64,000 bases of DNA. Origin: Ranitomeya imitator. Its lineage: Eukaryota. Within the stretch, counting starts at the first letter, position 1. Each line of letters begins with the position of its first letter. Positions 11,117 to 43,876 of this stretch are shown here, piece after piece. The DNA is taken from NCBI RefSeq assembly GCF_032444005.1, contig NC_091291.1, forward strand, positions 21,576,001-21,640,000, in the 5' to 3' direction. The translations under genes were made by a program, and so were the position numbers. The notes beneath the pieces were generated by a model. It made no database searches, had not been told where the DNA came from, and was given only the letters and a program-made list of their open reading frames with translations.

Positions 11117-11177
11117 ATGACAGACTGGAGTCTACATTTCCATGCAATAATATTGATTAGTCCTCTGTTATGGAAAG
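11117..11177 (+). CDS. Gene B signal-peptide exon
   Basis: MTDWSLHFHAIILISPLLWK-G|gtgagt; ending matches the gene D leader (PLFWKG). Confidence 0.8.
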
Positions 11178-14100
11178 GTGAGTACAAAGTTTCTCCTACT
11201 TGTTGTACATGGTTCATTTTGTAATGTTGTGATGCATGTAGTCAATGAATTGTCTCTAGAGCCACTCTTATGGTCCATTTAGACTGACTGACCAATGGCA
11301 CGATAATACCGCCGATTGGTAAACATTTACCTTACGGCGGTTGGTCGAATGCTTTTATATACAGGCAGACCAAAGAAAATGATGTCCACTGAGCATTTCT
11401 ATACTAGTTTGTTCAGTGTGCATATGCTGCCATTATCCACCGAGAATGATGACATTTATGTTGCGTAAAAGATCATTTCACCAAATGAACAAGTGTTTTG
11501 TTCGCTCAACGGGTGATCCACAGTCCGTTTACATGGCAAGATAATTGTTTGTTCATGAATATCGTGCAGTGTGAATGCCACTTTAGTCATTTTCATGGTA
11601 CTGTACAATGAAATGATCAGTAATTTGGGAGAGGAAGCCTAGAAAAACTTTCCTAGTCAAGTTCTTAGGATTGAAGCTTACCTTACAATACAAGGAGAAT
11701 TTTAGAAAACAAGATCTAAAGATACCATCTTAGTCGGTTCCATAGTAATGACAGAAACTTTACATTGGAAAGTTGAGTAGCTTACAAAATAAAATATACA
11801 GTAGATGCTCTGATTTTTCCTTTTAAAAAAGTTTGAAGATTACAAAATAGAGCTGATCGGAAAAATTTGGGGGACCCTGGTTCAACGGCCACGTCGATAG
11901 ACCTTTGCCACCAGACCTGAGATCTTGAGAACCTCCTCGTAAAATGCAAACCTCCTCTTATGCAGGCTCCATTTCTGATTAATATCCCCGATGCAACCTC
12001 AAGCATGCATTACGCAACAACGATGAGTTACCAATCAAAATAGGGACCAAGAGGGTTGGAGGCGAGGACATTTGCAGAGCTAGGATTTCACAGTTATGGT
12101 CCTGTAAAAAATTTTTTTGCTCAACTATAAAAAATAGTAACTATAATAGTTATTATCAGGGGGCAGTATCTAATTTTTAATAAGAAATATATTGGAAAAT
12201 TGCTTTTTTAACAAGCACTTTCCAATTATACCTTTTAGGACTCTGTAATGTTAAGCAGTGAGTCGGTTACAAAGTAGGACTCAGAGACACTCTCTGAAGT
12301 CTTCCCAAAAGTATGGAAAGTTATAATAAAATATAAAGTTTACTTTAAAAAAAATCTGTTTGAACTTAATTATGTTTGCTGCAAAGATAACTATGACCAC
12401 AGCATAATCAATGGGGGAAATTAACATTTGCACAGTTGGCATGCAATGGAATGGCTAGTAAAATGGAAATATTTCGCTGTCTAGAACTTCTATTTTAAGA
12501 GAAAACACTATGTGAGACATTTTTGATTATTGACCAAAAATATCAGCGTAAAATCTCATAGTCATCTTTATCGCTGAAAAAGTGAAAATGTTGGGTATTT
12601 AATGGGTCACATCTTGAAATTTTTGTCTGTGCTCTTATCTTGACTTAGATGTAGGATCACAGTTTAATCAAGGATTTGCCATAACGGCTCCAAGAAATGT
12701 TGTTGTCCAGGCAGGACTCTGTGTGCATATTCCATGCTCATTTAAATTGCCATCAGTCTTCACCATCTCCAGGAACGCCCGAGGAATCTGGTTCAGAGGA
12801 AATTTCTTGTCCTCGCAAACTGTGGCTGTTAAAAGTAGTTTTGAACTTCCAAATAAAAGAGACAGGTTCTTTCTTACCGGAGATGTCTGGAGAGGGGATT
12901 GTTCTCTGATGATCAACGATGCAAGGGAGCAAGACGCGGATTCTTACAGTTTTAGAATTGAGGATGGAAGCGGTGTTTTTCCTTTCTATGACTTCAGTAC
13001 CTTACTGAGAGTGATAGGTAAGTAATAGATTATCCAATATTTTCATAGTTTTCACTAGTCAGGACACACAAGCCACTGCTCTTACTATAGTTACTTATTA
13101 CGTCACTTGGTTAATGCTTGGAAAATTTCGGAACTACCAACAAGATGTTCATAGAGAAACCAAACAAGGTGATGGGATCTTGGACAAACTGAGGTTCATG
13201 TTCAATCTATTGTGGTAGGAAGGGAAGACATACCATTGGTGTAATCCTCTGCAGCTGCACAAGCACCCAATGAGTAAAGGGGATCCCTTCTATGGCCAAA
13301 GTAGGTTGGGTCTTGCAATGCGATAAGGTATAGGACGCCAAAGGGCCCATATTGTTTTTGCACAAGGGCCCTCATCTGTCTGCTTCCGCCAGTGGTTGGA
13401 AGAGTTGTCGATTAAGTCTGGACTAAGCCTTTTTGCTCATTTTATGTGAAAAACAAATAATTACTAAAACAGAAATCAGGATAATCGACTTCTTCTGTAT
13501 ATGTCAAGTAACTCCCATGTGAAGTCTTATATGATTGGAGAAATTCCCTCTCTTCTCAATTCGACCAAGACTATCAGATTGGTTTGTCTTGATGACCACA
13601 ATTTTGTTGCCCTTTACTTTCATGGCCATGTCAAGCCTGCATAGCGATATCATTAAATTTAGATTACAAAACTCAACACTAAATGTATCCAGACACCAGA
13701 CCTCAAAAAATTTGATTCAGACCCAAGTCTAAATCCCTACTTTAATTTATACCTCAGAGCAGACATTGTCAATTTATTCAGACCTAAGACCAGAATGGTC
13801 AAACAACTCCATCCCCAGAAATAACCACTCAATGAATTCAGGAACCAGACCACACCACTCAATCAACTCCATCCTCAGACATAACTACTCAATCAAATCA
13901 GACCCCAGAACAGACCACCCAATCAACTGAGACCCCAGACCAGACCATTCAGTCAACTCAGACTTCAGACCACTTAATCAACTTGGACTTCAGACCACTG
14001 AATCAACTCAGACACCAAACTAGATCACTCAATCAGCTCAAATTCAAGATCATACCCATAAATAAATTCAGACCCCAGACCAGACTACTCAATCAACTCA

Positions 14101-17100
14101 AATTCAAGATCATACCATAAATAAATTCAGACCCCAGACCACACTACTCAAACAACTCCAAACTCCAGACCAGACCACTCAATTAGCTCAGACCCCAGAC
14201 CAGACCTATAAATAAATTCAGATCCCATCTCAGACCACTCAATGATTTTAGATGACAGACCAGACCCTTCAATGAATTCAGACTTTAGCATAAACTTCTC
14301 ATTTATTTTAGACAGCAGACCAGACCCTTCAATGGACTCTGACAACTAGACCAGACTCCTATTTAAATTCAGATCCTAGAACAGACCACTAAATCCATGT
14401 AACATCTTTCTCTCTTTGGCAGAATTGTCAGATAAACCAGAGATATCTCCGTCAGGAAAGATTATTGTTGGCCAGGAGACAACCCTGAGTTGTACAAGTC
14501 CTGGAATATGTTCTGGAATATCTCCGTCCATCAAATGGGAAGGAAAACTTAAAATGAAGACAGAGAAAATCTATGCAATAAATAATGAAGATGGCACCAT
14601 CATACATCGTTCTAATGTCACCTTTGTTCCATCGGCTGAAGATGATCAACTTTCCCTCACCTGTAAAGTCACCTTCGAAAATAATGTGACCACAAGTAGA
14701 AGCATCTCTCTGAATGTAGAGGGTGAGTTTTCCTGGAGAAGAGAGATGCTTCCTTTGAAGTACAGCAGTGTCCAATGATACAATTTTCTGTTTTATGGAG
14801 GAGAACAAATTAGGAAACTTTCCCCCAAAAGTGTGACCTGTTAGATCCCCTCTATAAAGAGCTATATCTCTAGCCTGGATGATTTCTTTCATTTTTGTTC
14901 CTTTTTTTTTTAATTGAAAATTGACCTACAGTGACATTATCTATAGGCGGCACTTGAGTGATGACTTCTTCTGTAAAAAGACTTGGAACATCTTGAGAGT
15001 TACAATAATAAAAGAAGTAGCTGTAGTACTAAACTTTAATAGTTAGAGGTGAGTGAATCGGTTCAAGGTGAATTAAATTTGCCTTGAACTTTAAAATTTG
15101 GATTCTCCGGGATCTGAATTTATTGTAATATGTCAGATGCTAAATTGTAATGGGCCGGAAAAAGGATGAAAAACAAACAAAAATCTTCACCACTCACCTA
15201 TCCTGCTGCAGCGGCTGCCTCCAGCCTTATCTTTATTTTACAGTGTGCAGCATCCTCTTCCTTCATCTGCACTTTGCACCAGGGCTTTCAGCTGCCGCCA
15301 TCTCATTGCGTCGTCTAGTCAGCTCCTAGGCCACTAATATCATGACTTGAGCGGTCAAAGTCACAGAGCAGAGATGCAGGAAGAGGACGTTGCATAATGT
15401 GAAGAAGTAAAGAAAAGCCTGGAGAGAGCTGCCCGGAGGACCGGTCCTGCGGTGGCAGGAGAGGTGAGGCGGAGTGAGTATTTTTTTTTCACGCTGAATA
15501 AATCATGCTGTGTGGTCTAGAGAGCATGATAATGCAAATTTGATGGAATAATTTCCTGGCAAAATGTGAAGAACTGGCACAATTAAATGTCTGCAGACTC
15601 CATAATCTCTACTAATAATCTAGTAGTGGTAATAATGTAGTAATAGTTTAGTCATTGTCGTATCTTAGTTCTATATAGATAATAATTAATGTGTGTTTGT
15701 TCCACAGGTGCTATCCAGAAGGATATTCCTATGCCTGGTGAGTTTACAGCTATCAGTGGTTGATGCATTAATTTTATTGTCATAAATATGAATTGTATGA
15801 ATTGTATGATGCTAGTCACTACTCACGGACAAGCCGTGGGGTTGAATAGTCAAGAAGTCTGGGGTAAAAAACCTACAGAGTTCATCATATACAAAGGGGT
15901 AAGGCAAAAGGAGTAGTCAGGTCACAGTCCAAAAGTCAAAACAAAAGAGGTAATACAAACGGGTAGTTAATAGGCAAATCCAGGGTCATGCAACCAAAGA
16001 TCAGAATGTCAGAATTCACAACACAAGGTAAAGAGAACAGGCCACACAGATATGAAAGCTACGACCAGCAGCTATCTGAGACAGACAGCTTGGTTAAGTA
16101 GTTGGGTAATTACTTGAAACAGGGAACACCTGACGGAAGCTCAGAGCCTCCCTAGTCAAAGATTGGACGGCCGAGCTGTCATTCAAAACACTGACACCTT
16201 GGCATGCCCCTGCAGTAGATTGGACGACTGAGCTGTCAGTCACTATCCAAGACACACTGAGAGGTGGAATCATGACAAAATGTAGTAGTAGTGGTAATAG
16301 TAGAAGTAGTAATAACCTAATATAAATAGTAGTATATTAGTAGTAGTCTAGTAGAAGCAGTAGTAGCAGTAATAGTACTAATAGTACTCACATAACAGTT
16401 TTGTGGGGGTTTTATTGCCCTTTTGACATGATATCTTTATTCCATGCATCAATAAATACTCCATAATTTGAGGACCTTAAAGGAAATGAGAGAATCCCCA
16501 AATTATGTAAAGCAATGTGAACTGTTGTGAATTCTGTGGCAGAGCTCCCTCCTGTGGTCACAAGTGGTACTTCGGCTGATTCTCTCTGGGAGCTTCCGTT
16601 TGCGGAGGAAACTGGTACTGCGGCTTCTGAGTTTCCTCCCTCAGGTGATCTGGTGAGGTCGTTAGGTGCTTCTCTACTTAACTCCACCTAATGCTTTGAT
16701 TCATGCTTCCTGTCAATGTTCCAGTGTTGGACTTGTTTTTCCCTGGATCATTCCTGTGGCCTGCTGCTCTGCATAGCTAAGTTCTTCTTTGCTATTTGTT
16801 TGCTATTTTGTCTGTCCAGCTTGTCTATTTGTTTTGCTGGAAGCTCTGGGACGCAAAGGGTGTACCTCCGTGCCGTTAGTTTGGTACGGAGGGTCTTTTT
16901 GCCCCCTTTGCGTGGTTTTCTTTAGGGTTTTGTGTAGACCGCAAAGTTATCTTTCCTATCCTCGCTCTGTTAAGAAAGTTGGGCCTCACTTTGCTGAATC
17001 TATTTCATCTCTACGTTTGTCTTTTCATCTTAACTCACAGTCATTATATGTGGGGGGCTGCCTTTTCCTTTGGGGTATTTCTCTGAGGCAAGGTAGGCTT

Positions 17101-20100
17101 ATTTTTCTATCTTCAGGCTAGTTAGTTTCTCAGGCTGTGCCGAGTTGCATAGGCAGAGTTAGGCGCAATCCACGGCTGCCTCTAGTGTTGTTTGGAGAGG
17201 ATTAGGGATTGCGGTCTGCAGAGTTCCCACATCTCAGAGCTCGTTCTATTATTTTGGGTTATTGTCAGATCACTGTATGTGCTCTGACCTCCATGTCCAT
17301 TGTGATACTGGATTGCCTTTCATAACAGTACAGGAAGCCAAAAGTACTAATGATTCTCAATAGAGGGAAAAAAGAAGTTCTGAGACCATTTTTTTTTCTT
17401 GGCACGGTGTTTTGTCTTTTTTTTCCCCTAGACATTTGGGTGGTTCAGTACACAGGTGTAGCGATGGACATTAGAAGTCTGTCTTCATTTGTGGATCAGC
17501 TCTTGGCAAGAGTACAAAAGATTCAAGACACTATTGATCAGAAATCTATGTTAGAACCAAGAATTCCTATTCCTGATTTGTTTTTTGGAGATACAACTAA
17601 GTTTCTGAGTTTCAAAAATAATTGTAAGCTCTTTCTGGCCTTGAAACCTCGTTCCTCTGGTGATCCAGTTCAACAGGTTTTGATTATTATTTCTTTTTTG
17701 CGTGGCGACCCTCAGGACTGGGCATTTTCTCTTGCGCCAGGAGATCCTGCATTAAGTAATATCAATGCGTTTTTCCTGGCGCTCGGATTGCTGTACGATG
17801 AGCCTAATTCAGTGGATCAGGCAGAAAAGAATTTGCTGGCTCTTTGTCAGGGTCAGGATGAGATAGAGGTATATTGCCAGAAATTTAGAAAGTGGTCAGT
17901 GCTCACTCAATGGAATGAATCTGCGCTGGCAGTTATGTTCAGAAAGGGTCTCTCTGAAGCCCTTAAGGATGTCATGGTGGGATTTCCTATGCCCGCTGGT
18001 TTGAATGAGTCTATGTCTTTGGCTATTCAGATCGGTCGACGTTTGCGTGAGCGTAAATCTGTGCACCATTTGGCGGTATTACCTGAGCTTAAACCTGAGC
18101 ATATGCAGTGCGATAGGACTTTGACCAGAGTTGAACGGCAAGAACACAGACGTCTGAATGGGCTGTGTTTCTACTGTGGTGATTCCACTCATGCTATCTC
18201 TGATTGTCCTAAGCGCACTAAGCGGTTCGCTAGGTCTGCCACCATTGGTACGGTACAGTCAAAATTTCTTCTGTCCGTTACCTTGATCTGCTCTTTGTCA
18301 TCGTATTCTGTCATGGTGTTTGTGGATTCAGGCTCTGCCCTGAATTTGATGGACTTGGAATATGCTAAGCGTTGTGGGTTTTTCTTGGAGCCCTTGCAGT
18401 GTCCTATTCCATTGAGAGGAATTGAAGCTACACCTTTGGCCAAGTATAAGCCTCAATACTGGACCCAGCTGACCATGTGCATGGCTCCTGCACATCAGGA
18501 GGTTATTCGCTTTCTGGTGTTGCATAATCTGCATGATGTGGTCGTGTTGGGGTTGCCATGGCTACAAGCCCATAATCCAGTATTGGATTGGAAATCCATG
18601 TCGGTGTCCAGCTGGGGTTGTCAGGGGGTACATGGTGATGTTCCATTTTTGTCAATTTCGTCATCCACCCCTTCTGAGGTTCCAGAGTTCTTGTCTGATT
18701 ACCGGGATGTATTTGATGAGCCCAAGTCCGATGCCCTACCTCCGCATAGGGATTGTGATTGTGCTATCAATTTGATTCCTGGTAGTAAATTCCCAAAAGG
18801 TCGACTGTTTAATTTATCCGTGCCTGAGCACACCGCTATGCGCAGTTATGTGAAGGAATCCCTGGAGAAGGGGCATATTCGCCCGTCATCGTCGCCATTA
18901 GGAGCAGGGTTCTTTTTTGTAGCCAAAAAGGATGGTTCGCTGAGACCTTGTATAGATTATCGCCTTCTTAATAAGATCACTGTTAAATTTCAGTACCCCT
19001 TGCCATTGTTATCTGATTTGTTTGCTCGGATTAAGGGGGCTAGTTGGTTCACCAAGATAGATCTTCGTGGTGCGTATAATCTGGTGCGAATCAGGCGAGG
19101 CGATGAATGGAAAACTGCATTTAATACGCCCGAGGGTCATTTTGAGTATCTAGTGATGCCATTCGGACTTGCCAATGCTCCATCAGTGTTTCAGTCCTTT
19201 ATGCATGACATCTTCCGAGAGTACCTGGATAAATTCCTGATTGTGTACTTGGATGACATTTTGATCTTCTCGGATGATTGGGAGTCTCATGTGAAGCAGG
19301 TCAGAACGGTTTTTCAGGTCCTGCGTGCTAATTCTTTGTTTGTGAAGGGATCAAAGTGTCTCTTTGGTGTGCAGAAGGTTTCATTTTTGGGGTTCATCTT
19401 TTCCCCTTCTACTATCGAGATGGATCCTGTTAAGGTGCAAGCCATCCATGATTGGACTCAGCCGACATCTCTGAAAAGTCTACAAAAGTTCCTGGGCTTT
19501 GCTAATTTTTATCGTCGCTTTATCTGCAATTTTTCTAGTATTACCAAACCATTGACCGATTTGACCAAGAAGGGTGCTGATTTGGTCAATTGGTCTTCTG
19601 CTGCTGTGGAAGCTTTTCAAGAGTTGAAGCGTCGTTTTTCTTCTGCCCCTGTGTTGTGTCAACCAGATGTTTCTCTTCCGTTCCAGGTCGAGGTTGATGC
19701 TTCTGAGATTGGAGCAGGGGCTGTTTTGTCACAGAGAGGTTCTGATTGTTCAGTGATCAAACCATGCGCTTTTTTTTCCAGGAAGTGTTCGCCTGCTGAG
19801 CGAAATTATGATGTGGGCAACCGAGAGTTGCTGGCCATGAAGTGGGCATTCGAGGAGTGGCGTCATTGGCTTGAAGGAGCTAAGCATCGCGTGGTGGTAT
19901 TGACTGATCATAAGAACTTGACTTATCTCGAGTCTGCTAAGCGTTTGAATCCTAGACTGGCTCGTTGGTCGCTGTTTTTCGCCCGCTTTGACTTTGTGAT
20001 TTCGTACCTTCCGGGCTCTAAAAATGTGAAGGCGGATGCTCTGTCTAGGAGTTTTGTGCCCGACTCTCCGGGTTTATCTGAGCCGGTGGTTATCCTCAAG

Positions 20101-24999: not shown

Positions 25000-26344
25000 A
25001 GACATCGGAAGGACCCTATATTGTAGAAGAGAGACCAAAGATTGGAAATGGCGGCGATTTCAGGATCAACTATTTTCTTGATATCAACTTCGTTATTTAT
25101 GGGGGGTTTTTGTATGTTACCTATATGGTCCTGTATACTGTATGTACCAGCCCCAGTTAACAATCAAATTCAATATGTAAGAGGTGGGATTCAAGTCTAA
25201 AATGCAGTAGCCACCATTGCTTTCTTTTGCTTCATGCTTCGTTTGCTACTGCAAACGTTCTCCTATAGCATTCCCAAGCATGGCAGAAAGCTTCCAGCGT
25301 CTTTCATGGCTACTACACAATGTGTGAAGCTCTGGCACTTTTAGTGTGCTAGGGTACTGAGGGTGTCAGGAGTTGGACCCATGCAATGTCATAAAGATAT
25401 CTTAGGGATAGGTTAAGGTAGAGAAAAAGGGGGTGGTTGGATCTTACCATGCCTAAGTAAGATTAGAGTCCAAAACCGGTGGATACCATGTCTCCAGCTT
25501 GTGCAGCACAGCAACAATAGAAGGAAAAAAAGAGGGAGAGCGGCACTTCCAGGGGCTCAATAAGACAAAAATTTTATTTAGCAAGCCATAAAAAAGACAA
25601 ACAGGGTTGAAAAATTAACGCGTTTTTGGCGTCCAGGATGCCCTTATTCATAGCATGATACTATGACTGAAATCCTTGTTTTATTGAGCCGCTGGAAGAG
25701 CCGCTTTCCCTCTTTTTTAATTCTAAGGATAGGTCATCAATATTGAAATACTAGAAAACCACTTCAACTTCCTCCATTCACTTGCAGTGCCGCTCATGGC
25801 CACTGTACGTGTGCGAAGCTGTGCCACTTCTAGTGTGCCGTGGGACATTTAATCAGCTGATTTTTGCGGGTGACTGGTGTTGGACCCACAACAATGGATG
25901 AATGATAGGTTATTGATTTATAAGTACTGGAAAAGCTCTTTATCTTCCTTTATAGAAAATCCCAACCAATTATAACCCAGTAATAAGTACTAAAGGGGTA
26001 TTCCCAAAAGAAGTTTCTTAAGGATGTATCATATATGTATAATATGTGGATCTCCAATCTATGGGACGCCATCCTATAAGGGTACAGGTGAACTGCTATT
26101 TTTCTAGATGGAGGCCACTAAAAGGACCTTGACACTTTTTCATAGCTGTTCCCCAAAATCCAAGATTATAATATAAAGTTCACTAAAGATGAGCAAACCT
26201 GAACTTAAAAATTTGGGGTTCTTACTGATTAGTTAGTACCTGGTGCTAAACACCAAACATGGAAGTCCGTCTTAATGTTTGTTGTTCCAGGGAAAGTCTG
26301 GGAAAAGAGAGAGAGATTTACATCTTCAAAGTTTTGGTCACTAT

Positions 26345-29906: not shown

Positions 29907-29966
29907 GAATGTGCAAAAGCAATTACAATAAAAAATATTGTTATAAGTGTCAGAAGCAAGGAAATA

Positions 29967-30620: not shown

Positions 30621-31622
30621 TTTTGAGGGTTCAGTGACGGTCAGTAGAGCAGATCTGTATTCCTCCAGTTGGTGCCTTGGTTCGCTGGTGGCTCTTCTTT
30701 AGAGTCTCTGCAAACCACAGCAATTTGTTTTAATGAAGAAGCTCAACACTTTGAAACGCGTTAACCAGTAGACCACAATCTTGGACTCTTGTTTCCTCCT
30801 CATCTTTCCAATGGTAGCACAATTTTAACCCATCTTTATTCCAGTCTTTTATGTTTGCCACTACTTTGGATCATTTTGCTTGTCTGTTATACATTGAGTT
30901 TCCTGAGAAATCCAGCTTTACTATACAAATAGACTGCCACATCTTTGCATTGAGCTTCCTGACCAACCCAACTACAACAACACAAGTGCACTGAATCTTC
31001 GGATCTATTTGGCTCTACTACATCAATAAGATCTCAAACATTGCTGTTCAGTGCTTCTTAGGGCTGATATTTTCTGCTCTACTAGATTGCCAAGTCTACT
31101 CTGTCATGCCATTATCTTGGCCAGTTTCATCAATCTTTCTTCTTTGAGTCATGGGCTTACTACTGGACTACTACTCTTTTTTCCTATGGTTGCTGTTTAG
31201 TGTATTTAGCATCCATTGATCCTTCCTGTCTGCTGCACCAACATCATATTTCCGTGCTACACAATAACCGATTATCTGGACCAACGCCTTCCAGAATCTA
31301 CTTCACCGGGTGAGACATAACACATTGTGAATTTTTGCATTCTGCCGGGAACTATTTTTTAGTCTGTCGTTGCAAAAGTTTGGTCTTTTCTCTGATTTTA
31401 ATAAAATTTCCCATTTCCTGTGCTTTGTTTGTCAAGTATGTCATTGTAATGCTTTCACTGTGCAGTAAATTAAGTCCTTACATGATCTGTGAAAAGTTAA
31501 AGGTGGACACATAAAATGAAGAAATCCAGGAAAAAGAAAAAGGAGAAGTTGCTGAAGACTTTCAGAAATGTTATTTTCAAAAGAGACAACGCCTCGCAAA
31601 TCAAGAGTTAATCTCCGTCAAG

Positions 31623-31689
31623 ATGATGCAGAATAGCGGCTTTGACATTTGGGTCAGTCTTTCTATTGTCCTGGCTCTACTCTTGAAAA
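31623..31689 (+). CDS. Gene C signal-peptide exon
   Basis: MMQNSGFDIWVSLSIVLALLLK-A|gtaagg; phase 1. Confidence 0.75.
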
Positions 31690-34600: not shown

Positions 34601-37600
34601 ACAACTTTTTTTTGTGAATTTAACTATTTGCCTGCTCAGGCTGCGGTACACCCAGGAAGCGATTGATGCAGGTATGCTGAGCTTTCATTGTTTGAGTTGT
34701 GTATTTTTTCATGGTTGAAAGCAATGAGCAAACTCCGTAGGAAAGAAAAATAAGTCAAACAAATGATGCAAAGGAAAGCAGTTGACTATCAAAGAAAGTG
34801 TCACAGTCCTGTTGCAGGATATCCCGAGACAAGGGGCTCCATCCCGAACCCTCAAGCTAAGGGACGCCCTAATCTATCCATGTTTCCTGGATTACCCCAG
34901 AAGGTGGAGATGCCAGGGTCACATGCCTTTGCTATGGGAAGAGAGACAGGGATAAATGAAAATTGCAATCATACAAAATACACTCTTCAAACAACAGAGT
35001 GGTACACAGGGGAGGGGAAGGTAGGCAAAACTAAATAGGAGAGGATGAGGATGAACACGCAAACTCCAAGTAGAAATCTCCAGGACAACTCTCTATCAAT
35101 TCTAACCACCAAACATCTCCTCCAACTGTAAACCAGGCAGAATAAACTATCACTGGTAATTTCCAAATGCCAATGGCAAGAACATATATTCCGCAATCTT
35201 CTGGCCACTCTCTGTCGAGATATCCCCATGACGAAGAGGGAATGAAATGAAAGAAGGTGAATAGATAAAAGAAAAACAGGTGAACAGAAAAGGGAAGAGA
35301 TTGAAGGGAAAAGGAAGAAGGGAAGTGAAGGGAATGGTACAGAAAAGAGGTGAAAGGAATGTAGAAAAATGGAAATGAGGAGTGTGGAAAGCAAAAAAAG
35401 AGATAGAAGAAAAGAACAGAAAGAAACAAAGATGAATGGGAGTGAAACATGTTGAAAGAAAGAGAAGGAAATAAAAGTAATAAAAGGCCAAGGGAAAGTG
35501 AAGAGGCGAATTGAAAGGAAAGCTATTGAAGCAAAAGAGATGAAGGAGAAAAAAGGTGAATAAAAAGTGTTGATGGCGATACAAAAGAGGTGGAGGGAAT
35601 GGAAAAATTTGTAGAGCGGAAAAAGGTTGGGGAAAAATAATTAAAGGGAAAGGAAAAGGGATAAAGGAGAGAAAAGAAAAAAAGAAATGAAGCAAAATAT
35701 TTTCAAGAAAAATGGAAGAGAATGAAAGGAATGTAAAGTACAAAGAAAAAACTAAATGTGGTTAATAGAAAAAAAAGGAGAAATGAAAAAATAATTTAGA
35801 GACAAGAAAAGCAGATAAATGATAAGGAAGAGAAGGAGAATAGGAAAGGAAATGAAAGGAAAATTAAAGGGTATAAAGTTAAAGGAAAGGAAGTAAAAAA
35901 AGGTCCAGGAACAGGAAAGTAGATGGATGAAAAAAAACAAAAAATAAGATGCAGAAAGGAAAGAAAAGACACGGAAAGAAAGAACAATTCAATAAAATCC
36001 TTATAATCTTAAGGTATCTTCCATTATTTTTCTACTTCTATAAGTAAAGTGTTTTTCTTTTCCAGATAAAGATACATTTCTGCAATTACTAGAAATAGTA
36101 AACTTAGTGCTTTTGTAAAAAAAAATATATTTAAATTTATTTTGCCTCTTTTCCTGCTCTTCCAGGTCAGACGATTTCTTGTCCAGGTAAATATACTCAG
36201 TGTGATATTTGTCCTTTCGATCATTATTGTCCTCAGCCAATATAATTAACATATTAGTAAGTTTATATTACATTGGTAATTCAGCCATAAAGAAGTAGTC
36301 CATCTTGTTCTGTCTAGTGAGTGACATGAAATGGGACACAATTATTCTCCTTCGTATCCCCCATGAATCTTTATTTCATCCACCACCCCCTTACTGTCAC
36401 GCCATAAGCGGCGTTAAAGGGGCAGGCGGGCGTACTGGGACCCGCACCTGTCCTTACCACTTTAATGGGGCCCTGGCTTTCCCTTATCTCGGGGGTACCT
36501 ATGATGGTTAGGAGGCCCGAGCCGCCAGCGTCTCCCTGTCTCCTGTGCAGGCCCTATAAGTGGCCCCCTCTCCCCCCCCCAGGGAGGAGGACTGCACCAG
36601 TGTATAAACACAACAATAAACAGGGTATACAGACAAGGTAACTAACAGTCTCAAACTCACCAAATGCTCACACAACCACAGAGGGTACACATAGAAGGGA
36701 AGAGAAGGAGAAAACTAGGAAGGAAAACAGGTTTAGCAAGCAACCGAAACAACAGACACCAATCTCTGTAATAAACCTAAAAAGCTCCAAATATCACACT
36801 CCTTCAACCTCCAAGCCAGGCAGCAGAACTGATCACTGATACTAGCTGTAGTCAAGGCTGGGTCTATATAGAGGAGGAGATTACAAAAATCCACTTCAGC
36901 TAAGAGACTTAGCTCACAGCAACTTAGCAAATAAGGTTAACTCCTGCACTGCTGGCACAAAGCAGCCAGGTCAAAATCAGGAGAAGAGCTTCTGTTCACT
37001 GTGCCCAGAGCGCTGTGGTTCTCTGGAACCTCTCTGTTGCGGTAGCCCCGTGACACTTACACTCTACGTTAGGTGTGACACAAGGTCTCTGCTCTGTTTG
37101 GACTCTTCCTTTAAGCAACCAATGATTCACTGATATTTTATGTTCTAATATTGCACCATTTTTTTACAGTGTGCAGATCTATGGATTCTTCCCTTATCAC
37201 TGGGATGGTTGTTGGAAACGTTATCATCCTTATCCTGATCATTTTGGGGTCATATTGCTTTCTCAAGAAACATGCAGAGAAAAAACTATTAGGTAGCAGT
37301 AAGTAGTCGCAAAACTTTTTTCTTGGATTTTAATCCGTTCTCAGTGTTTTGGCTGCAGCAGTCATGTCACATCACTGCTGCCACCAATCATTGAGCTCAG
37401 TGGCTCTTATGAGAGCATAAGCCGCTGAGCTTAGTGATTGACTGCAGCAGTGATGTAAGCTGTATTCACTTCTGCAGCCAAAACATTGAGACCAAATAAA
37501 CTTTCATGAATGCTTTCAAAACTAAAAGTGTATATATAACCAGTTTACAAACATGCAGTTAACGTACAGCTCGTAGTTACAAATGCCGGATGTTTAGAAA

Positions 37601-40600
37601 ATAACCCAAACTCATGGCTGAAATCTCCAGCTGTCAGCCGGCCTTCTTCTTCCATCATCATGCACAGGCCTTTTTACTGTAGGAGAGGATTTTTGTTCAT
37701 ATCCACACCAGAGCTCACTATGCATCAGGTCTTGTCATCATTGCAACCTAATGATGCACAGTGACTTTTGGATGAGTACTGACATCTTAGCCTACAGTTA
37801 AGGGGCCGAAGAGGTGGCATCCAAAAATGGAAAGAAGAGAACTGAATGGCAAGCGCTTGGGTCACATCCATGTTGGAGCTCACTGCGTCATAAGATCTCA
37901 TCGTCATTGCAACCTTATGAGGAACAATAAGTTCTCGACACATACGGAAGTCCTGGCCTACAGTGAAGGAGCCAGAGAGATGGCATGCCCAACAATGGAA
38001 AGAAGAGGACCAGATGGTAAGCAGTTGGGCCACATCTAGGCCAAAGCTCACTGCGAGTGATCAGTTCTAGTCGTCATTGTAACCTTATGATGCGCAATAA
38101 GTTCTGGACACATATGGAAGTCCTGGCCTACAGTGAAGTGGCTGGAGAGGTGGGGCGCCCAACAATGGAAAGAAGAGGACCAGATGGCAAGCAGTTGGGC
38201 TACCACCTGGTCAGAACTCACTGCATGTCAAAAGGTCTAGTCGTCATTGCAATCTTATGATGTGCAGTGAGTTCTGGATGCATATGGAAGTCTTGGCCTA
38301 CAGATAAGCGGTCAAAGAGGTGGCACAACCAACAATGGAAAGAAGACCAGATGGCAAGCAGTTGGGCTAACACCTGGTCGGAGCTCACTGTGTGTCACAA
38401 GGTCGAGTCGTCATTGCAATCTTATGATGCGCAGTGAGTTCTGGAGGCATACGGAAGTCTTGGCCTACAGTGAAAGGGCCGGAGAGGTGACGCGACCAAC
38501 AATGGAAAGAAGAGAACCAAATGGCAGGACGTTGGGCCACATCTAGGCCAGAGCTCATTGTGAGTGATAAGGTCTCATCTTCAATGCAACCTTATGACGA
38601 GCAGTAAGTTCTAAGATGTGTACGGAAGTCCTGGCCTACAGTGAAGGGGCCGGAGAGGTGAGAAGAATTTTAATAAGTAATTTGATAAGTTGCTTGCTAT
38701 TACAATTTTTTTTCCATCTAAGAAGGCAGGCTTCATTTTAAAAAAGTTTGCACTTATAAAGGGAATGTGTTATATAAAATAGCACTTCTATACCTTTCTT
38801 TTACAAATTTTCCTTAAGAGTTTGTTTTTGCTCCCCACCTTAAACAAGATGATCAGCAACCACAATTATAACAGCCAAATTGAGTTCCTAGAATGCAGAA
38901 GGAAAGTTAGTATTTCCTATTATGAACCGCAACCATAATAAGTATATGCACAGTACATATGCGATCATGCTGCAGTGCAGGAGCCACGGCCGGCGCCTAC
39001 CAGCAGAAAGGCTTTTTCTTTCAGTATGTATATATAATTTTCATTATGTAAACTAGGGGGCAGGTCAGTTGGGATCAGTGACCTGTCAGCAGTCTGCGTT
39101 TTGAATAGCTAATCAGAGCACCACAAGAAGACGCCCAACGGACTGCCCCAAAGCACGGGCATATCATTAACTCAAAACTGAAAAGAAAGATTAAACAAGA
39201 ACCACAAGACAGATTTCATCCCCAGGTATCAGTGTAAACAGCATAACGGCGCCGACCTGACACTGTCTGTAGGTTACTGTAGGACACTTTAAACTGTAGG
39301 TATGATTAATAATTCAACCCCATTTGCTAAATATAGATTTAGAATTGATTCAAATTATTGTATGTTTTCTAGGGAATGGAACGCAGAATTCTGAACCAAA
39401 AGACGACAGAACAGAATCTACTTATCAGGTATTATAACAGCTACTAAGAGTTTTAAACAAACCTACATGAAATCAAATCATAATTCAGAATGTCGCTGTA
39501 AGATCAATGCACTGCTTGCATTCTACTGAACTGTCTCCTTCTTATCGTGAAGGCTGTATGTGACCACACAGAAATGCTAAGGATGGAAATATCCCTTCAT
39601 TGTACAAGTGATAGATAGATATATTGGGGAAAATAAGTATTTGATACTCTGCTGATTTTCCAAGATTTCCCACCTACAGAGAACGGAGGGGTCTATAATT
39701 TTTATTTCAGGTACACTTCAACTGTGAGAGACAGAATCTTAAAAAAAATCCAGAAGATCCAATTGTATGATTTTTACATAATTAATTTGCATTTTATTGC
39801 ATGAAATAAGTATTTGATAGAATAGAAAAACAACTTAATATTTGGTACAGAAACGTTTACTTGCAATTACAGAGGTCAGACGTTTCCTGTAGTTCTTGAC
39901 AAAACGTTCTCCTGACAGTTCTTGATGCCCAGGAAAATGTTGAGCCTGGCCATCATCAAGGAGTAAAAGTGCGACTGGTCTAGCCCCGTTGTCCTCTTGC
40001 CAGAGCTTGATGGAGAGTTGCATTTCTGCAACAACTGCAGGAAACTAAATGAGGTGTCTAAATTTGACGAGTATCCGATGTCCTGCATCGATGAACTCAC
40101 AGAGAAGCTAAGGTCAGCCACATACATCTCAACCCTGAACCTAACGAAAGGTTACTGTCAAATACTCCTCTATCAAAGTGCCAAGAAGTAGATGGTCTTT
40201 TTTACCTTGGACGGTTGCTTTCAGTACACCAGAATGCCGTTTGGGTTGCTATCTTCTAGAAGGCCATGGACCGGATCCTAGCCCCTTACAACAAGTTTGC
40301 TGCAGCTTACCTCTATGATATTGTGATTTTCAGCCCAGAGTGGGGAAGTCATCTGCAGAAGGTCCAGGCCATGCTGAATGCTCTGAGGAAGGCCAGGTCT
40401 ACCATAATCACAAAGAAGTGCGCCAAGGGGAAAAGAAGGAAAAATACTTGGGCTACATAGCCAGGAGTGGCGGAATAAAGCCACAAGTGAAGGTGGAGGC
40501 AATCCAAAATTGGCAAAAAACGGTCTCCAAGAAACAGATTCTGGTGTTTCTGAGAAAGATGGGATACTATCAGAGGTTAATCGGCCATGTTTAGGGCTAG

Positions 40601-43600
40601 GATGATTGAACAGCTGTAGAGTGGTTGGGAGGATGTTCAACACATCTCCACCCTAGGGTGGAGTCCAGAGAATAAATACACAGCCTTCTGGCTCATTACA
40701 AGGTGGAGTGTGCCTGGAGATTTTTTAATTATTGTTTGTTTCCTGAGTGGGGGAATCCCCTCATCAAGACCTACTGTGTCGTTGGTTTTGGTTTTTTTTT
40801 CTGTTAGGCCAGAAAGGCCATGTTTATACGATGATCCTGCCCTGGTTTATGCTGTACCTAAATAAACCAGTGGAAAATTTAAAGAGACAACCTTACTAAG
40901 TGTCTCCCTCTATGAGGAGCCAAGGGATCCGATCTACAACTGTGGGAAAGCTTGCAAAATTGGCAATATTTCAAATACTTATTTTCCCAGCTCATTAACC
41001 ACAAAATATCTGTTCAAAGTGACAATGGCACTTCCAGAAGCTATATAATTACAACGCAAACTGCAACTGCAATTAAAGAGTCAAATGAAGGTTCGAGTTT
41101 TAAGAAGAGGTCCATATTAAAATTTCATTTTATTGATACAAAAAAATTAAAAACATAATTTTAAGCAGAGATTGTCATGTAGGGGACGTTGTTCAGACAA
41201 AAAAGGTAACAAGGGAGGAGCAGAAATTAGTATTATTGTACTATTCAATACATCTGTTTCCTGATTCAATTTTAGTTTCCAAGTAAATGGCAATAAACCA
41301 TAGAATACACAAAGTGCACTGTGATGGTCAGGAATTAATAAAAATAGGCAAAATGACTATGACTCTATAGTGTGTGGATAAGGTAAGTCAGAAAGGTATT
41401 GTGGAAATAGAAGGGAAATGCACCAATCTTAATTATGTTCAGAGTTGTGCTAGTATGCTGCAAGTGCAGAGTAACAATATAGATATAGATCAATGTGTTC
41501 TCCCCCAATTCATGAGATTATAGGATCACACAAAGTGAATGCATAAGGTAAATAGTCATAAATTAATAATGCCAGGAGTATTGATAAAGTGATCTGTGCC
41601 GAAATTACCTTGGAGAGGTTGTCAGTAATTTCTAAATGGGAAATAATAGCCACAGCATTCCCTCACCCCGACGCGCGTTTATCCAGAAGAAGCTAATTTC
41701 TCTGCCTCCCTAGTTACCTTTTTTTTGTCTGAACAGTGTCCCCTACATGACAATCTCTGTTTACAATTATGTTTTTCATTTTTTGTGTCAATGAAATTAA
41801 ATTTTAATATGTATCGCTTCTTAAAACTCGACCTTTCATTTGAATCGGTGCTTGCAGTTCACATTGTGTTTATTTTCCCAACTGTAGATACACATATAAC
41901 AATTAAATGAGTTTCATTCAAGGATCTTTGGATGAGACTGGACTGCGATAGACTGTAGTATAGATAGATAGATGGCTATTAGAGAGATAGATTATAGATA
42001 GATAGATAGTGTTAGGCGTCGAGTTCCCGCAGCTGCACAGGGGGAATCTCAAGCCATGTCCTCTGCGGTCTCCCATTTTTCCTCAGCCACAGACGATTCT
42101 GCTCAGCAGAGATATCGGTCCCAGCGTCATGCTCAGGCTAATGCTGTTCGTTTTGTTATTGCTGCCTTCCCAGGTCCAGCTATAGCAATCAGCATTAGTC
42201 AGCAGCGAGCAGACGCTCCTGGGACTAAGTCCTGCTTTTGGCCTTCTGAGCATGCCCATGAGATGGCCACTCATTGGTGGTCGGAGGTCACATGCTCAGG
42301 TCCTCAAGCTGCTCAGATTGGTCCAGTAGCAAGGTCCCGGAAGAGGAAGACTGCAGCTATAAAAGGTTCGCATGGCCGTACGCTAGTATATCCTATAATC
42401 GTGGTGTGTGTGTGCAAGCATATATGTCTCTGCCTCTGGTGAAAGCTCCTAATGATCCCCTACCCACGTGTCTGGGTAATTGGAGTATAGATACAGCGCC
42501 TAAGTAGTGGCATCGCTAGCGCGACGCCATGCGGTCACATTGCACAGACCCAATTTATAGAGTCAGTTAGTGGTGTTTGCCAGTGCGACGCCGCACACAC
42601 TCACTGCGCTAAATTCACTAAATTTAGCATTGGTTAGTGGCGTTCGCCAGTGTGACGCCAGTTGTGCCCTGTGTCAGCTAACAGGGTATAGCGCTCATAT
42701 TTGTATTACTTTGCAGCAGCTCTGGAGGTAATAGAGTTTGCCACAGTTCACACCGGGTGACAGCCAACCCGTGTGTATTCGGCGCTACACCGCCATATTG
42801 TGTCCACCATTACCGAACTGCAGTTACCATCCCTGCACGGTGGACCCCAGGGTGTGAACGCACCTTATTATCATCTTTATATTTATTTGNNNNNNNNNNN
42901 NNNNNNNNNNNNNNNNNNNNNNNNNNNNNNNNNNNNNNNNNNNNNNNNNNNNNNNNNNNNNNNNNNNNNNNNNNNNNNNNNNNNNNNNNNNNNNNNNNNN
43001 NNNNNNNNNNNNNNNNNNNNNNNNNNNNNNNNNNNNNNNNNNNNNNNNNNNNNNNNNNNNNNNNNNNNNNNNNNNNNNNNNNNNNNNNNNNNNNNNNNNN
43101 NNNNNNNNNNNNNNNNNNNNNNNNNNNNNNNNNNNNNNNNNNNNNNNNNNNNNNNNNNNNNNNNNNNNNNNNNNNNNNNNNNNNNNNNNNNNNNNNNNNN
43201 NNNNNNNNNNNNNNNNNNNNNNNNNNNNNNNNNNNNNNNNNNNNNNNNNNNNNNNNNNNNNNNNNNNNNNNNNNNNNNNNNNNNNNNNNNNNNNNNNNNN
43301 NNNNNNNNNNNNNNNNNNNNNNNNNNNNNNNNNNNNNNNNNNNNNNNNNNNNNNNNNNNNNNNNNNNNNNNNNNNNNNNNNNNNNNNNNNNNNNNNNNNN
43401 NNNNNNNNNNNNNNNNNNNNNNNNNNNNNNNNNNNNNNNNNNNNNNNNNNNNNNNNNNNNNNNNNNNNNNNNNNNNNNNNNNNNNNNNNNNNNNNNNNNN
43501 NNNNNNNNNNNNNNNNNNNNNNNNNNNNNNNNNNNNNNNNNNNNNNNNNNNNNNNNNNNNNNNNNNNNNNNNNNNNNNNNNNNNNNNNNNNNNNNNNNNN

Positions 43601-43876
43601 NNNNNNNNNNNNNNNNNNNNNNNNNNNNNNNNNNNNNNNNNNNNNNNNNNNNNNNNNNNNNNNNNNNNNNNNNNNNNNNNNNNNNNNNNNNNNNNNNNNN
43701 NNNNNNNNNNNNNNNNNNNNNNNNNNNNNNNNNNNNNNNNNNNNNNNNNNNNNNNNNNNNNNNNNNNNNNNNNGCAATTATGATGGAAAATTGATTTTTG
43801 AAAACAGTAAACTTTTGTTTTGAAGGACCTAACGGGACAGCAGGACAACACCTACTACAACATAAGGATACAATGA
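31623..43876 (+). CDS. Gene C, Siglec-like V-set + C2-set receptor with cytoplasmic ITAM: join(31623-31689,33047-33418,33754-34056,36166-36186,37170-37292,39373-39428,43826-43876), 330 aa
   Basis: Phase-compatible GT-AG exons (993 nt) with the same architecture as gene B. YYFR keeps the Arg; tail ESTYQ|DLTGQQDNTYYNIRIQ*. The last exon lies just past an assembly gap. Confidence 0.86.
31928..32484 (+). mobile_element. Old solo LTR
   Basis: TGTGAT...ATCACA termini, TATAAAT box, T-rich body; TSD not clear. Confidence 0.45.
33047..33418 (+). CDS. Gene C Ig V-set exon
   Basis: ttttcaacag|GT...ATC G|gtacgt, 372 nt; VQEGLCVTIPCQF...GNPDYGDCTLTINNAKREDDGTYYFRHE. Confidence 0.93.
33754..34056 (+). 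CDS. Gene C Ig C2-set exon
   Basis: ttcctag|AG...GTA G|gtaagt, 303 nt; ELSDKPEI...CTSPGRCSGKSPLITW...LTCMV. Confidence 0.93.
35240..35990. repeat. Purine (A/G)-rich low-complexity tract in gene C intron 3
   Basis: Composition seen directly. Confidence 0.85.
36166..36186 (+). CDS. Gene C 21-nt stalk micro-exon (GQTISCP)
   Basis: ttttcctgctcttccag| ... CCAG|gtaaat; phase 1-1; same position as the gene B micro-exon. Confidence 0.7.
36395..37055 (-). mobile_element. Solo LTR in gene C intron 4
   Basis: TGTCAC...GTGACA termini; 5-bp TSD CTTAC; orientation inferred from base skew. Confidence 0.85.
37170..37292 (+). CDS. Gene C transmembrane exon
   Basis: VCRSMDSSLITGMVVGNVIILILIILGSYCFLKKHAEKKLL; 123 nt. 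Confidence 0.88.
37711..38660 (+). repeat. ~168-bp tandem repeat, ~5.6 copies, in gene C intron 5
   Basis: Units start at ~37711, 37876, 38044, 38215, 38381 and 38551 (gagctcact...). Confidence 0.9.
39373..39428 (+). CDS. Gene C cytoplasmic exon (...RTESTYQ)
   Basis: ttttctag|GG...TATCAG|gtatta; phase 1-0. Confidence 0.8.
39623..39900. mobile_element. Tc1-like terminal fragment
   Basis: TGGGGAAAATAAGTATTTGATA with an internal direct repeat AAATAAGTATTTGAT near 39805. Confidence 0.55.
39955..40940 (+). pseudogene. Decayed Gypsy reverse-transcriptase fragment followed by LTR-like sequence
   Basis: RKLNEVSKFDEYPM, YISTLNLTKGYCQI, RMPFGL, AAAYLYDIVIFS and YLGY, broken by stops and frameshifts. 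Downstream shares TTAGGCCAGAAAGGCC and GGTTTATGCTGTAC with 27348-27737. Confidence 0.8.
41958..42009 (+). repeat. (GATA)n microsatellite
   Basis: Seen directly. Confidence 0.8.
42010..42889 (+). mobile_element. Solo LTR or 5' LTR, family 1, truncated by the gap
   Basis: TGTTAGGCGTCGAGTTCCCG start; homologous to 28865-29906. Confidence 0.85.
42890..43773. other. Assembly gap (N run)
   Basis: Run of N. Confidence 1.
43826..43876 (+). CDS. Gene C terminal exon (DLTGQQDNTYYNIRIQ*)
   Basis: cttttgttttgaag acceptor; same length and codon-level homology with 24949-24999. Confidence 0.78.
   Translation, partial: DLTGQQDNTYYNIRIQ

What the first reader, a model, noticed from the sequence alone, without database searches (positions are those of the whole stretch)
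11117..43876. Siglec-like lectins with their own cytoplasmic ITAM (genes B and C)
Seen: two paralogues with a Siglec V-set (essential Arg kept in YSFR and YYFR) and a C2-set. Their spliced tails end ETNYQNLIGQENDVYYSLRMH* and ESTYQDLTGQQDNTYYNIRIQ*, an exact YxxL-x7-YxxL/I ITAM with an acidic residue upstream. Both Tyr and both hydrophobic positions are conserved while spacer residues vary. Established: mammalian Siglecs signal through ITIM/ITSM or, in Siglec-14/-15/-16 and Siglec-H, through a TM Lys that recruits DAP12; an intrinsic ITAM is the design of receptors such as CEACAM3. Inference: these are adaptor-independent activating sialic-acid receptors that couple directly to Syk/ZAP70, possibly phagocytic sensors of sialylated microbes. 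The ITAM exons are too small for the ORF track and easy for annotation to miss. I cannot confirm novelty without a literature and database search.
Basis: partly seen in the sequence, partly recalled or inferred. Interest (0 to 1): 0.92.

Follow-up and report, generated by a model that had tools for sequence, protein, structure and literature searches.

The report
Frog Siglec-like receptors with built-in ITAM
Two neighbouring poison-frog genes encode CD33/Siglec-type receptors whose own short tails carry a canonical ITAM activation motif, unlike mammalian activating Siglecs, which borrow it from the adaptor DAP12. The design is real, transcribed and widespread in amphibians, but it is already present in RefSeq gene models and mirrors the ITAM tails known from frog CEACAMs.

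Summary
Genes B (11117-24999) and C (31623-43876) are intact seven-exon type I receptor genes. Each has a signal peptide, a Siglec V-set with the key Arg, one C2-set, a mini exon, a TM without Lys/Arg, and two small tail exons.

The tail exons together spell D/E-x-x-Y-x-x-L-x7-Y-x-x-L/I. The first YxxL is split by a phase-0 intron, the classic ITAM exon signature.

The N gap at 42890-43773 lies inside gene C's last intron. RNA contigs from three runs join 39428 directly to 43826. The spliced product equals a RefSeq protein of Ranitomeya imitator ('Siglec-14 isoform X2').

Six orthologues from other frogs keep the same tail. The only R. imitator model found for it stops before the ITAM exons.

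Of 192 fetched homologues, 32 end in this module, 24 of them canonical. They come from nine or more frog families and a salamander, and ITIM/ITSM paralogues sit beside them.

The sequence and fold of the ectodomain match CD33 and Siglec-5/-7/-10 best.

Syk coupling and sialic-acid binding are inferred, not shown. I found no paper describing ITAM-bearing Siglecs, but two key reviews could not be read.

Verdict: a new variant of a known kind, of moderate interest.

The parts
11117..11177 (+). Gene B exon 1: start codon and signal peptide (ends in phase 1)
   Evidence: ATG followed by a hydrophobic leader and a GT donor. It matches the N-termini of orthologues P0187 and P0159.
12649..13017 (+). 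Gene B V-set exon, with YSFR (Arg at 12954-12956) and the Siglec-type Cys pattern (GLC..IPC..GDC)
   Evidence: Pfam V-set E 5e-7 and Ig_CD22; AG/GT sites.
14423..14722 (+). Gene B C2-set exon
   Evidence: Pfam C2-set_2 E 1e-6; boundaries.
15708..15737 (+). Gene B mini exon (10 aa, GAIQKDIPMP)
   Evidence: Present in P0189 and in the orthologues; AG/GT sites and in frame.
16521..22335 (+). LTR retrotransposon inside gene B intron 4. It is not part of the receptor but may affect it.
   Evidence: 809-nt LTRs that are 99% identical; an intact 1381-aa gag-pol ORF at 17350-21495.
22939..23061 (+). Gene B transmembrane exon (no Lys/Arg in the helix; one Asn)
   Evidence: Translation; aligned with orthologues.
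23286..23332 (+). Gene B cytoplasmic exon ending ...RETNYQ (first half of the ITAM; phase-0 donor)
   Evidence: conserved in six orthologues.
24949..24999 (+). Gene B terminal exon NLIGQENDVYYSLRMH plus stop
   Evidence: orthologues. RNA runs hold 19-39% of the sampled words of 22900-25500.
31623..31689 (+). Gene C exon 1: start codon and signal peptide
   Evidence: tblastn gives 100% identity to P0154 residues 1-23; sequence.
33047..33418 (+). Gene C V-set exon, with YYFR (Arg at 33346-33348)
   Evidence: Pfam V-set E 6e-14. PDB phmmer finds CD33 at E 1e-14, with the Arg aligned to the YFFRME motif.
33754..34056 (+). Gene C C2-set exon
   Evidence: Pfam C2-set_2 E 5e-7; boundaries.
36166..36186 (+). 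Gene C mini exon (GQTISCP), used in isoform X2
37170..37292 (+). Gene C transmembrane exon. An alternative donor 6 nt downstream (37298) is also used and stays in frame.
   Evidence: The loose ends of the X2 and X3 contigs show both donors.
39373..39428 (+). Gene C cytoplasmic exon ending ...RTESTYQ
   Evidence: RNA contigs cover it in X2, X3 and X5.
42890..43773 (.). Assembly gap, lying inside gene C's last intron
   Evidence: The RNA joint 39428|43826 skips it.
43826..43876 (+). Gene C terminal exon DLTGQQDNTYYNIRIQ plus stop; the 3' UTR continues to at least 44252
   Evidence: The RNA contigs run on to 44252.

Best explanation
Genes B and C are tandem paralogues of an amphibian CD33-related-Siglec-like family. 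Each encodes a small type I membrane protein: a signal peptide, a sialic-acid-type V-set, one C2-set, a short stalk, a TM helix without a basic residue, and a cytoplasmic tail of about 40 aa.

The tail ends in one canonical ITAM. It is built from the same two-exon module, with a phase-0 intron inside the first YxxL, that encodes ITAMs in frog Ceacams.

Inferred mechanism: clustering of the ectodomain by a multivalent ligand, probably a sialylated one, lets Src-family kinases phosphorylate both ITAM tyrosines. The tandem SH2 domains of Syk then dock directly on the receptor, and no DAP12-type adaptor is needed.

Because ITIM/ITSM-tailed paralogues sit in the same family, B and C probably act as the activating arm of a paired-receptor system.

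Shown here: gene structure, Siglec-type sequence and fold, the motif and its conservation, and transcription and splicing of gene C. Inferred: ligand, phosphorylation, Syk recruitment and cell type.
For: Gene structure:
- Both ORFs are intact with consensus splice sites.
- Gene C's product is identical to RefSeq protein P0154 of Ranitomeya imitator.
- Its ITAM junction appears in RNA contigs of three runs.
- RNA runs hold about 60% of the sampled words of the V-C2 stretch, roughly the share made up by exons.

Siglec character:
- The V-set's best solved relatives are CD33, Siglec-7, -5, -10 and -8 (E 1e-14 to 1e-11), with the Arg aligned.
- The AlphaFold model (pLDDT 77; Ig domains about 80-94) has 29 Siglec chains as its top fold hits. 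CD33 gives a TM-score of 0.83 normalised by target length.
- Neither TM has Lys or Arg.

ITAM:
- It arises in only 0.25-0.34% of composition-preserving shuffles.
- Six gene-B orthologues and five gene-C orthologues keep Y, L, GQ and Y..L/I while the spacer residues vary.
- 32 of 192 homologues end in the module, 24 of them canonical, including the salamander Pleurodeles.
- On a V-set tree, gene B falls in a 100/98-supported clade with 10 of 11 members ITAM-tailed. That clade reaches the early-branching frogs Pelobates and Discoglossus. Gene C falls in an all-ITAM clade of five (90/82 support, below the tree tool's star threshold).
- ITIM+ITSM paralogues exist in the same species (P0175).
- Xenopus Ceacam ITAM tails show the same ...ESSYQ | ELQF..DVYNNL split by a phase-0 intron (PMC5112662).
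Against: - There is no biochemical evidence for phosphorylation, Syk binding or glycan binding.
- Both halves also fit YxxPhi sorting signals, and some copies fit YxN (Grb2) motifs.
- Eight of the 32 family tails end in F, V or M, or have a 9-residue spacer, so they are not strictly canonical.
- In gene-B orthologues of Bufo bufo and Engystomops the key Arg is Lys, so sialic-acid binding is not universally kept in that lineage.
- Gene B in this genome carries a young 5.8-kb LTR element in an intron.
- Gene B has no AATAAA or ATTAAA within 1.5 kb of its stop.
- No full-length gene-B model for this species was found.
- Gene B's ITAM junction could not be checked on reads.
Confidence: 0.65

Rival explanations
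1. The double-tyrosine tail is used mainly for endocytosis and sorting (YxxPhi / AP-2), for Grb2 coupling (YxN), or as an inhibitory ITAM with partial phosphorylation. On this reading the proteins are endocytic or modulatory receptors rather than Syk-coupled activators.
For: YQNL, YYSL, YQDL and YYNI all fit YxxPhi. YQNL (B) and YYNI (C) also fit YxN. Several family members end in YYNF, YHTV or YHVM, which weakens the second SH2 site. Zimmermann and Kammerer class similar Xenopus Ceacam tails as 'endocytic or ITAM-like'.
Against: In B, C and 22 other homologues the full consensus is kept, including the acidic residue at -3 and the exact 7-residue spacer. That is more than sorting signals require. 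The two-exon phase-0 architecture is that of signalling ITAMs.
Confidence: 0.15
2. The receptors are ITAM-bearing, but their V-sets recognise something other than host sialic acids. On this reading they are pathogen decoys that have drifted from lectin function, like Arg-mutated mammalian Siglecs.
For: The gene-B and gene-C V-sets are only 38% identical. Gene-B orthologues in Bufo bufo and Engystomops have Lys in place of the Arg. The family shows repeated tail switching and long branches, as is typical of fast-evolving paired receptors.
Against: In B and C themselves the Arg, the A-strand aromatic residue (GF/GY) and an aromatic residue 7-8 positions after the Arg are all present. The Siglec disulfide pattern is invariant in the family alignment.
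Confidence: 0.2
3. Gene B is impaired or decaying in this genome. The recent LTR retrotransposon in intron 4 disturbs splicing or polyadenylation, so only truncated products without the ITAM are made.
For: The 5.8-kb element has 99% identical LTRs, lies in the same orientation as the gene, and sits between the mini exon and the TM exon. The only R. imitator protein found for gene B (P0189) lacks the tail exons. No canonical poly(A) signal lies within 1.5 kb of the stop.
Against: All seven exons are intact with consensus sites and no stop codon. Eleven runs, nine of them labelled RNA, hold 19-39% of the words of 22900-25500, about the size of the exons plus 3' UTR. P0189 does include the TM exon downstream of the element.
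Confidence: 0.15
4. The genes are CEACAM-family members rather than Siglecs, since ITAM-tailed CEACAMs are known in frogs.
For: The tail module is very like that of Xenopus Ceacam304/315/328.
Against: No CEACAM chain appears among the 60 best of 75 PDB sequence hits, or among the 50 fold hits listed. Siglecs fill the top of both lists. The V-set has the Siglec Cys pattern and the Arg. From general knowledge, CEACAM N domains lack the intradomain disulfide.
Confidence: 0.02

Closest known systems
Mammalian CD33-related Siglecs (CD33, Siglec-5, -7, -10)
   Same: An N-terminal V-set with the essential F-strand Arg, the Siglec disulfide pattern, a following C2-set, and closely similar sequence and fold. 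The genes lie in tandem clusters that include ITIM/ITSM-tailed paralogues.
   Different: The tail carries an ITAM in place of the ITIM plus ITIM-like motifs. The RefSeq names (Siglec-9, -13, -14) are automatic and do not imply orthology.
Activating mammalian Siglecs (Siglec-14, -15, -16, Siglec-H)
   Same: Presumed activating counterparts within a Siglec cluster.
   Different: Those have a TM Lys/Arg, a very short tail, and signal through DAP12. B and C have no basic TM residue and carry the ITAM themselves.
Xenopus ITAM-bearing Ceacams (Ceacam304, 315, 328 and others; PMC5112662) and human CEACAM3
   Same: Single-chain IgSF receptors with their own C-terminal ITAM or ITAM-like motif. The motif is encoded by two exons split YQ|xL in phase 0. 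They are paired with ITIM/ITSM paralogues in the same cluster.
   Different: The ligand-binding domain is a CEACAM N domain, not a Siglec V-set. Several of those tails have extra YxN exons.
DAP12 (TYROBP) ITAM
   Same: From memory, not tested: the DAP12 motif ESPYQELQGQRSDVYSDL closely resembles ESTYQDLTGQQDNTYYNI (gene C), ESTYEELKGQSKDIYSDL (P0160) and DSTYQELQRRQSDTYGEL (P0184).
   Different: DAP12 is a separate adaptor with a TM Asp and almost no ectodomain. Any homology of the exons is unproven.
FcgammaRIIA and teleost LITRs
   Same: Ig-superfamily receptors that carry an ITAM in their own tail (general knowledge; PMC4810170 for LITRs).
   Different: The ectodomains and ligands are unrelated. 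FcgammaRIIA has a 12-residue spacer.

Membership tests
Siglec (I-type lectin, CD33-related group) | N-terminal V-set Ig domain with the conserved sialic-acid-binding Arg on strand F | tested here: met
   YYFR and YSFR align with the YFFR motif of CD33 (Arg119). Pfam V-set and Ig_CD22 hits.
Siglec (I-type lectin, CD33-related group) | Siglec-type cysteine pattern: B-E intrasheet pair plus an extra Cys for the interdomain bond, with no F-strand Cys | tested here: met
   The GLC..IPC..GDC pattern is present. C52 and C105 are invariant and C47 nearly invariant in a 25-sequence alignment. The F strand reads YxFR, not YxC.
Siglec (I-type lectin, CD33-related group) | V-set followed by C2-set domain(s), with overall fold similar to solved Siglecs | tested here: met
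   Pfam C2-set_2. Foldseek ranks 1-29 are all Siglecs; CD33 has a TM-score of 0.83 by target length.
Siglec (I-type lectin, CD33-related group) | Arg-dependent binding of sialylated glycans | not testable with these tools
   Needs glycan arrays or binding assays.
Siglec (I-type lectin, CD33-related group) | Cytoplasmic ITIM plus ITIM-like motif (the inhibitory CD33r type) | tested here: not met
   The tails of B and C hold only the ITAM. Paralogues such as P0175 have LHYSTV...SEYAEI.
DAP12-coupled activating Siglecs (Siglec-14/-15/-16/-H type) | Lys/Arg within the TM helix and a short tail without motifs | tested here: not met
   Neither TM has K or R; an Asn is present instead. The tail carries an ITAM.
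ITAM-bearing immunoreceptors | Consensus D/E-x-x-Y-x-x-L/I-x(6-8)-Y-x-x-L/I in the cytoplasmic domain | tested here: met
   B: E-TN-YQNL-x7-YYSL. C: E-ST-YQDL-x7-YYNI. Both lie downstream of the predicted TM helix. 0.04-0.05% of shuffles give the full consensus.
ITAM-bearing immunoreceptors | Two-exon encoding, with a phase-0 intron splitting the first YxxL | tested here: met
   YQ|NL and YQ|DL at 23332/24949 and 39428/43826. This is the feature described in PMC5112662.
ITAM-bearing immunoreceptors | Phosphorylation by Src-family kinases and docking of Syk/ZAP70 tandem SH2 domains | not testable with these tools
   Needs biochemistry.
CEACAM family | N-terminal IgV-like domain of CEACAM type | tested here: not met
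   No CEACAM chain among the 60 best of 75 PDB sequence hits or among the 50 fold hits listed.

The most novel reading that the evidence does not exclude
Amphibians build their activating Siglecs by placing an ITAM exon pair directly on the receptor. That module is shared with neighbouring CEACAM-type genes, or with a DAP12-like gene, through exon shuffling. On this reading, cis-ITAM Siglecs are an old amphibian solution, at least as old as the frog-salamander split, that has not been described in the literature. The DAP12-dependent design of mammalian Siglec-14/-15/-16 would be only one of two evolutionary routes to an activating sialic-acid receptor.
Probability: 0.45. Interest if true: 0.6.

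Novelty: new variant of a known kind. Interest (0 to 1): 0.5.

Why it matters
If the tails work as ITAMs, amphibians have adaptor-independent activating Siglecs. That is a second wiring scheme for sialic-acid sensing.

It would give a natural, compact model of about 330 aa for how Siglec engagement can activate rather than inhibit. It would also offer a clear case of signalling-module exchange between the Siglec and CEACAM families, which are neighbours on human chromosome 19.

It bears on how paired receptors evolve under pathogen pressure, and on amphibian innate immunity.

The practical value is limited. The genes are already in RefSeq under misleading mammalian names, and function is untested.

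Tried and rejected
Gene B's junction is therefore unverified on reads.
- Ten literature searches for Siglec with ITAM and amphibian, frog, Xenopus, axolotl, CD33rSiglec or 'ITAM-bearing Siglec' found no description of such receptors.
- Cao et al. 2009 (Immunogenetics 61:401) is not held. I did not try to look up Bornhoefft et al. 2018 itself. Prior description cannot be excluded.
- I considered and rejected CEACAM membership, DAP12 coupling through a TM Lys, and the ITAM being a chance motif.
- I considered searching with the TM-plus-tail piece for DAP12-like relatives. I left it out because a 20-aa motif cannot reach significance in a database of 5.8 billion sequences.
- I did not type the spliced gene-B protein into exact look-up tools, because long strings must not be pasted.
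Full report
**What is there.**
The window holds a head-to-tail cluster of Siglec-like genes on the + strand:
- the cytoplasmic end of an upstream gene (1140-1259);
- gene B (11117-24999);
- gene C (31623-43876);
- the 5' part of a fourth gene, with its V-set exon at about 57.65-58.06 kb.

I rebuilt both genes from the three-frame translations and splice sites. Each has seven exons: signal peptide, V-set, C2-set, a mini exon of 30 nt (B) or 21 nt (C), transmembrane, a small cytoplasmic exon, and a 51-nt terminal exon.

All junctions are AG/GT. The introns are in phase 1 up to the TM exon, as is usual for Ig-superfamily genes. The last intron is in phase 0 and cuts the first YxxL between YQ and xL. 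The products are 326 aa (B) and 330 aa (C), with no internal stop.

**The assembly gap.**
The N run at 42890-43773 lies wholly within gene C's last intron, and the terminal exon starts 52 nt after it.

Two independent lines show that the exons on both sides belong together and are in frame.
- RNA contigs from three runs (X2, X3, X5; 1362, 844 and 1653 nt) join 39428 to 43826 with GT..AG ends. They continue upstream into the TM exon and downstream into a 3' UTR to at least 44252.
- The spliced translation is identical, residue for residue, to stored protein P0154. RefSeq calls P0154 'sialic acid-binding Ig-like lectin 14 isoform X2' of Ranitomeya imitator.

The window is therefore most likely from that frog. 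The contigs also show two in-frame donors for the TM exon, 37292 and 37298. No constitutive exon hides in the gap.

**Gene B.**
The 23332/24949 junction is therefore supported only indirectly.
- The exon structure is intact.
- Eleven runs, nine of them labelled RNA, hold 19-39% of the sampled words of 22900-25500. That is about what the three exons plus a 3' UTR would give.
- Full-length RefSeq orthologues carry the same tail: R. variabilis (89% identical), Dendrobates tinctorius, Phyllobates terribilis, Eleutherodactylus coqui, Bufo bufo and Engystomops pustulosus.

Caveats for gene B:
- A 5.8-kb LTR retrotransposon sits in intron 4 in the same orientation. Its LTRs are 99% identical and its gag-pol ORF is intact.
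- No AATAAA or ATTAAA lies within 1.5 kb of the stop.
- The only R. imitator protein retrieved for this gene (P0189, 'unnamed protein product') reads through the TM donor and lacks both ITAM exons.

It does not hold for the family in general.

**Is it a Siglec?**
- Pfam finds V-set and Ig_CD22 in the first Ig exon and C2-set_2 in the second.
- A search of all PDB sequences with gene C's V-set puts CD33, Siglec-7, -5, -10 and -8 on top (E 1e-14 to 1e-11). MAG and sialoadhesin follow. YYFRHE aligns to the YFFRME of CD33, which places the Arg on CD33 Arg119.
- The Siglec cysteine pattern (GLC..IPC..GDC, with no F-strand Cys) is invariant or nearly so across 25 family members.
- An AlphaFold model of gene C's protein (mean pLDDT 77; Ig domains about 80-94) has Siglec chains as its 29 best fold matches. 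CD33 scores a TM-score of 0.83 normalised by target length.
- No CEACAM chain appears in either list.

Membership of the Siglec structural family is therefore well supported. Sugar binding itself is untested. Two gene-B orthologues have Lys instead of the Arg.

**The ITAM.**
B reads E-TN-YQNL-IGQENDV-YYSL and C reads E-ST-YQDL-TGQQDNT-YYNI. Both fit D/E-x-x-Y-x-x-L/I-x7-Y-x-x-L/I.
- Shuffling each tail gives an ITAM in 0.25-0.34% of trials, and the full consensus in 0.04-0.05%.
- Conservation is the stronger argument. Among 192 homologues fetched, 32 end in this module, and 24 of them are canonical.
- By RefSeq or GenBank name they come from Dendrobatidae, Aromobatidae, Bufonidae, Hylidae, Eleutherodactylidae, Leptodactylidae, Ranidae, Pyxicephalidae, Pelobatidae and Alytidae, and from the salamander Pleurodeles waltl.
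- The tyrosines, the Leu, a GQ pair and an acidic position are kept, while the other spacer residues vary.
- On a V-set tree, gene B lies in a clade with 100/98 support in which 10 of 11 members are ITAM-tailed. The eleventh is a truncated model. The clade includes Pelobates and Discoglossus.
- Gene C lies in an all-ITAM clade of five (90/82 support, below the tree tool's star threshold).
- The rest of the family mixes ITAM, ITIM+ITSM and other tails, and needs at least five ITAM/ITIM switches.
- Neither TM helix has Lys or Arg, so the DAP12 route of mammalian activating Siglecs does not apply.

**Comparison with what is known.**
The accessible literature gives the standard picture. Activating Siglecs lack motifs of their own and use DAP10 or DAP12, and fish lack CD33-related Siglecs (PMC7226832).

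Zimmermann and Kammerer described Xenopus Ceacam paired receptors whose activating members carry ITAM or ITAM-like tails. [quoted passage not shown] Their Additional file 1 lists tails such as ...PQESSYQ | ELQFSNKDVYNNLRKTPR. This is the same split as here, with an obviously similar sequence.

The design is therefore not new for frog IgSF receptors. What is new is its attachment to a Siglec ectodomain.

From memory, and untested, the module also resembles the DAP12 ITAM.

Ten full-text searches found no paper describing ITAM-tailed Siglecs. The most relevant comparative paper, Cao et al. 2009, is not held, and I did not try to look up Bornhoefft et al. 2018.

**Mechanism and verdict.**
The best-supported reading is that B and C are activating, adaptor-independent Siglec-like receptors, the ITAM arm of a paired-receptor family. 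Ligand clustering would lead to Src-family phosphorylation of both tyrosines and direct docking of Syk.

The architecture is shown. The signalling and the ligand are inferred.

The rival readings are:
- the tail serves sorting, Grb2 coupling or inhibitory-ITAM use;
- lectin specificity has been lost;
- gene B is impaired by the LTR insertion;
- the genes are CEACAM family members, which the tests here reject.

I rate this a new variant of a known kind, of moderate interest. It is real, old and widespread in amphibians. It is already present, though unremarked and misleadingly named, in RefSeq. It is conceptually close to the published frog Ceacam system.

Noticed in passing
window 16521-22335: A young Ty3/gypsy-type LTR retrotransposon lies in gene B intron 4, in the same orientation as the gene. 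Its 809-nt LTRs are 99% identical and it has an intact 1381-aa gag-pol ORF (17350-21495).
   Followed up: partly
window 37292 / 37298: Gene C's TM exon has two donors 6 nt apart, giving LLG|N or LLGSR|N. Both are seen in RNA contigs and both keep the ITAM in frame.
   Followed up: partly
P0191 (Bufo bufo) and P0192 (Engystomops), aligned to window 12945-12956: In these gene-B orthologues the essential Siglec Arg is replaced by Lys (YYTFK), while the ITAM is kept. This is a possible loss or change of sialic-acid binding in an activating lineage.
   Followed up: no
window 22939-23061 and 37170-37292: The TM helices of B, C and most family members keep a G-N pair (GNVVILILI / GNVIILILI). This polar Asn stands where DAP12-coupled Siglecs have a Lys. 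It might mediate self-association.
   Followed up: partly
window 1140-1259: A cytoplasmic exon of an upstream neighbour matches the tail of P0141 at 65% identity. P0141 is a 1021-aa homologue retrieved with the V-set query, and its tail has repeated IYxN motifs. The rest of the neighbour gene lies off the window.
   Followed up: partly
window 56875-58076: A fourth Siglec-like gene starts here, with exon 1 just after the second N gap (56694-56830). Its V-set has YFFR. The V-set is nearest to the ITIM-tailed P0175 of R. imitator (74% identity). Its tail lies outside the window.
   Followed up: partly
P0189 versus window 11117-23066: The GenBank 'unnamed protein product' of R. imitator for gene B has a different first exon and reads through the TM donor (ends ...RSLGN). 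It therefore lacks both ITAM exons, and it differs from the window by one residue (SPAGK versus SPSGK).
   Followed up: partly
window 28.0-29.4 kb, 42.0-42.5 kb, 53.3-54.7 kb: Dispersed copies of one repeat occur on both strands, giving similar ORFs (...SAAVSHS...AQHRCRSQ...). One copy lies in gene C's last intron, next to the assembly gap.
   Followed up: no
window 58-64 kb: A long stretch has strong AT skew (0.33-0.42) and repetitive ORFs (for example 62014-62262), probably a tandem or satellite-like repeat.
   Followed up: no
P0054 / P0153 (Acanthopagrus schlegelii, 'CD22-like'): A teleost CD22-like protein of 827 aa also ends in a canonical ITAM (YMSL-x8-YDVI). Self-contained ITAMs on Siglec-type receptors may therefore not be limited to amphibians.
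   Followed up: no
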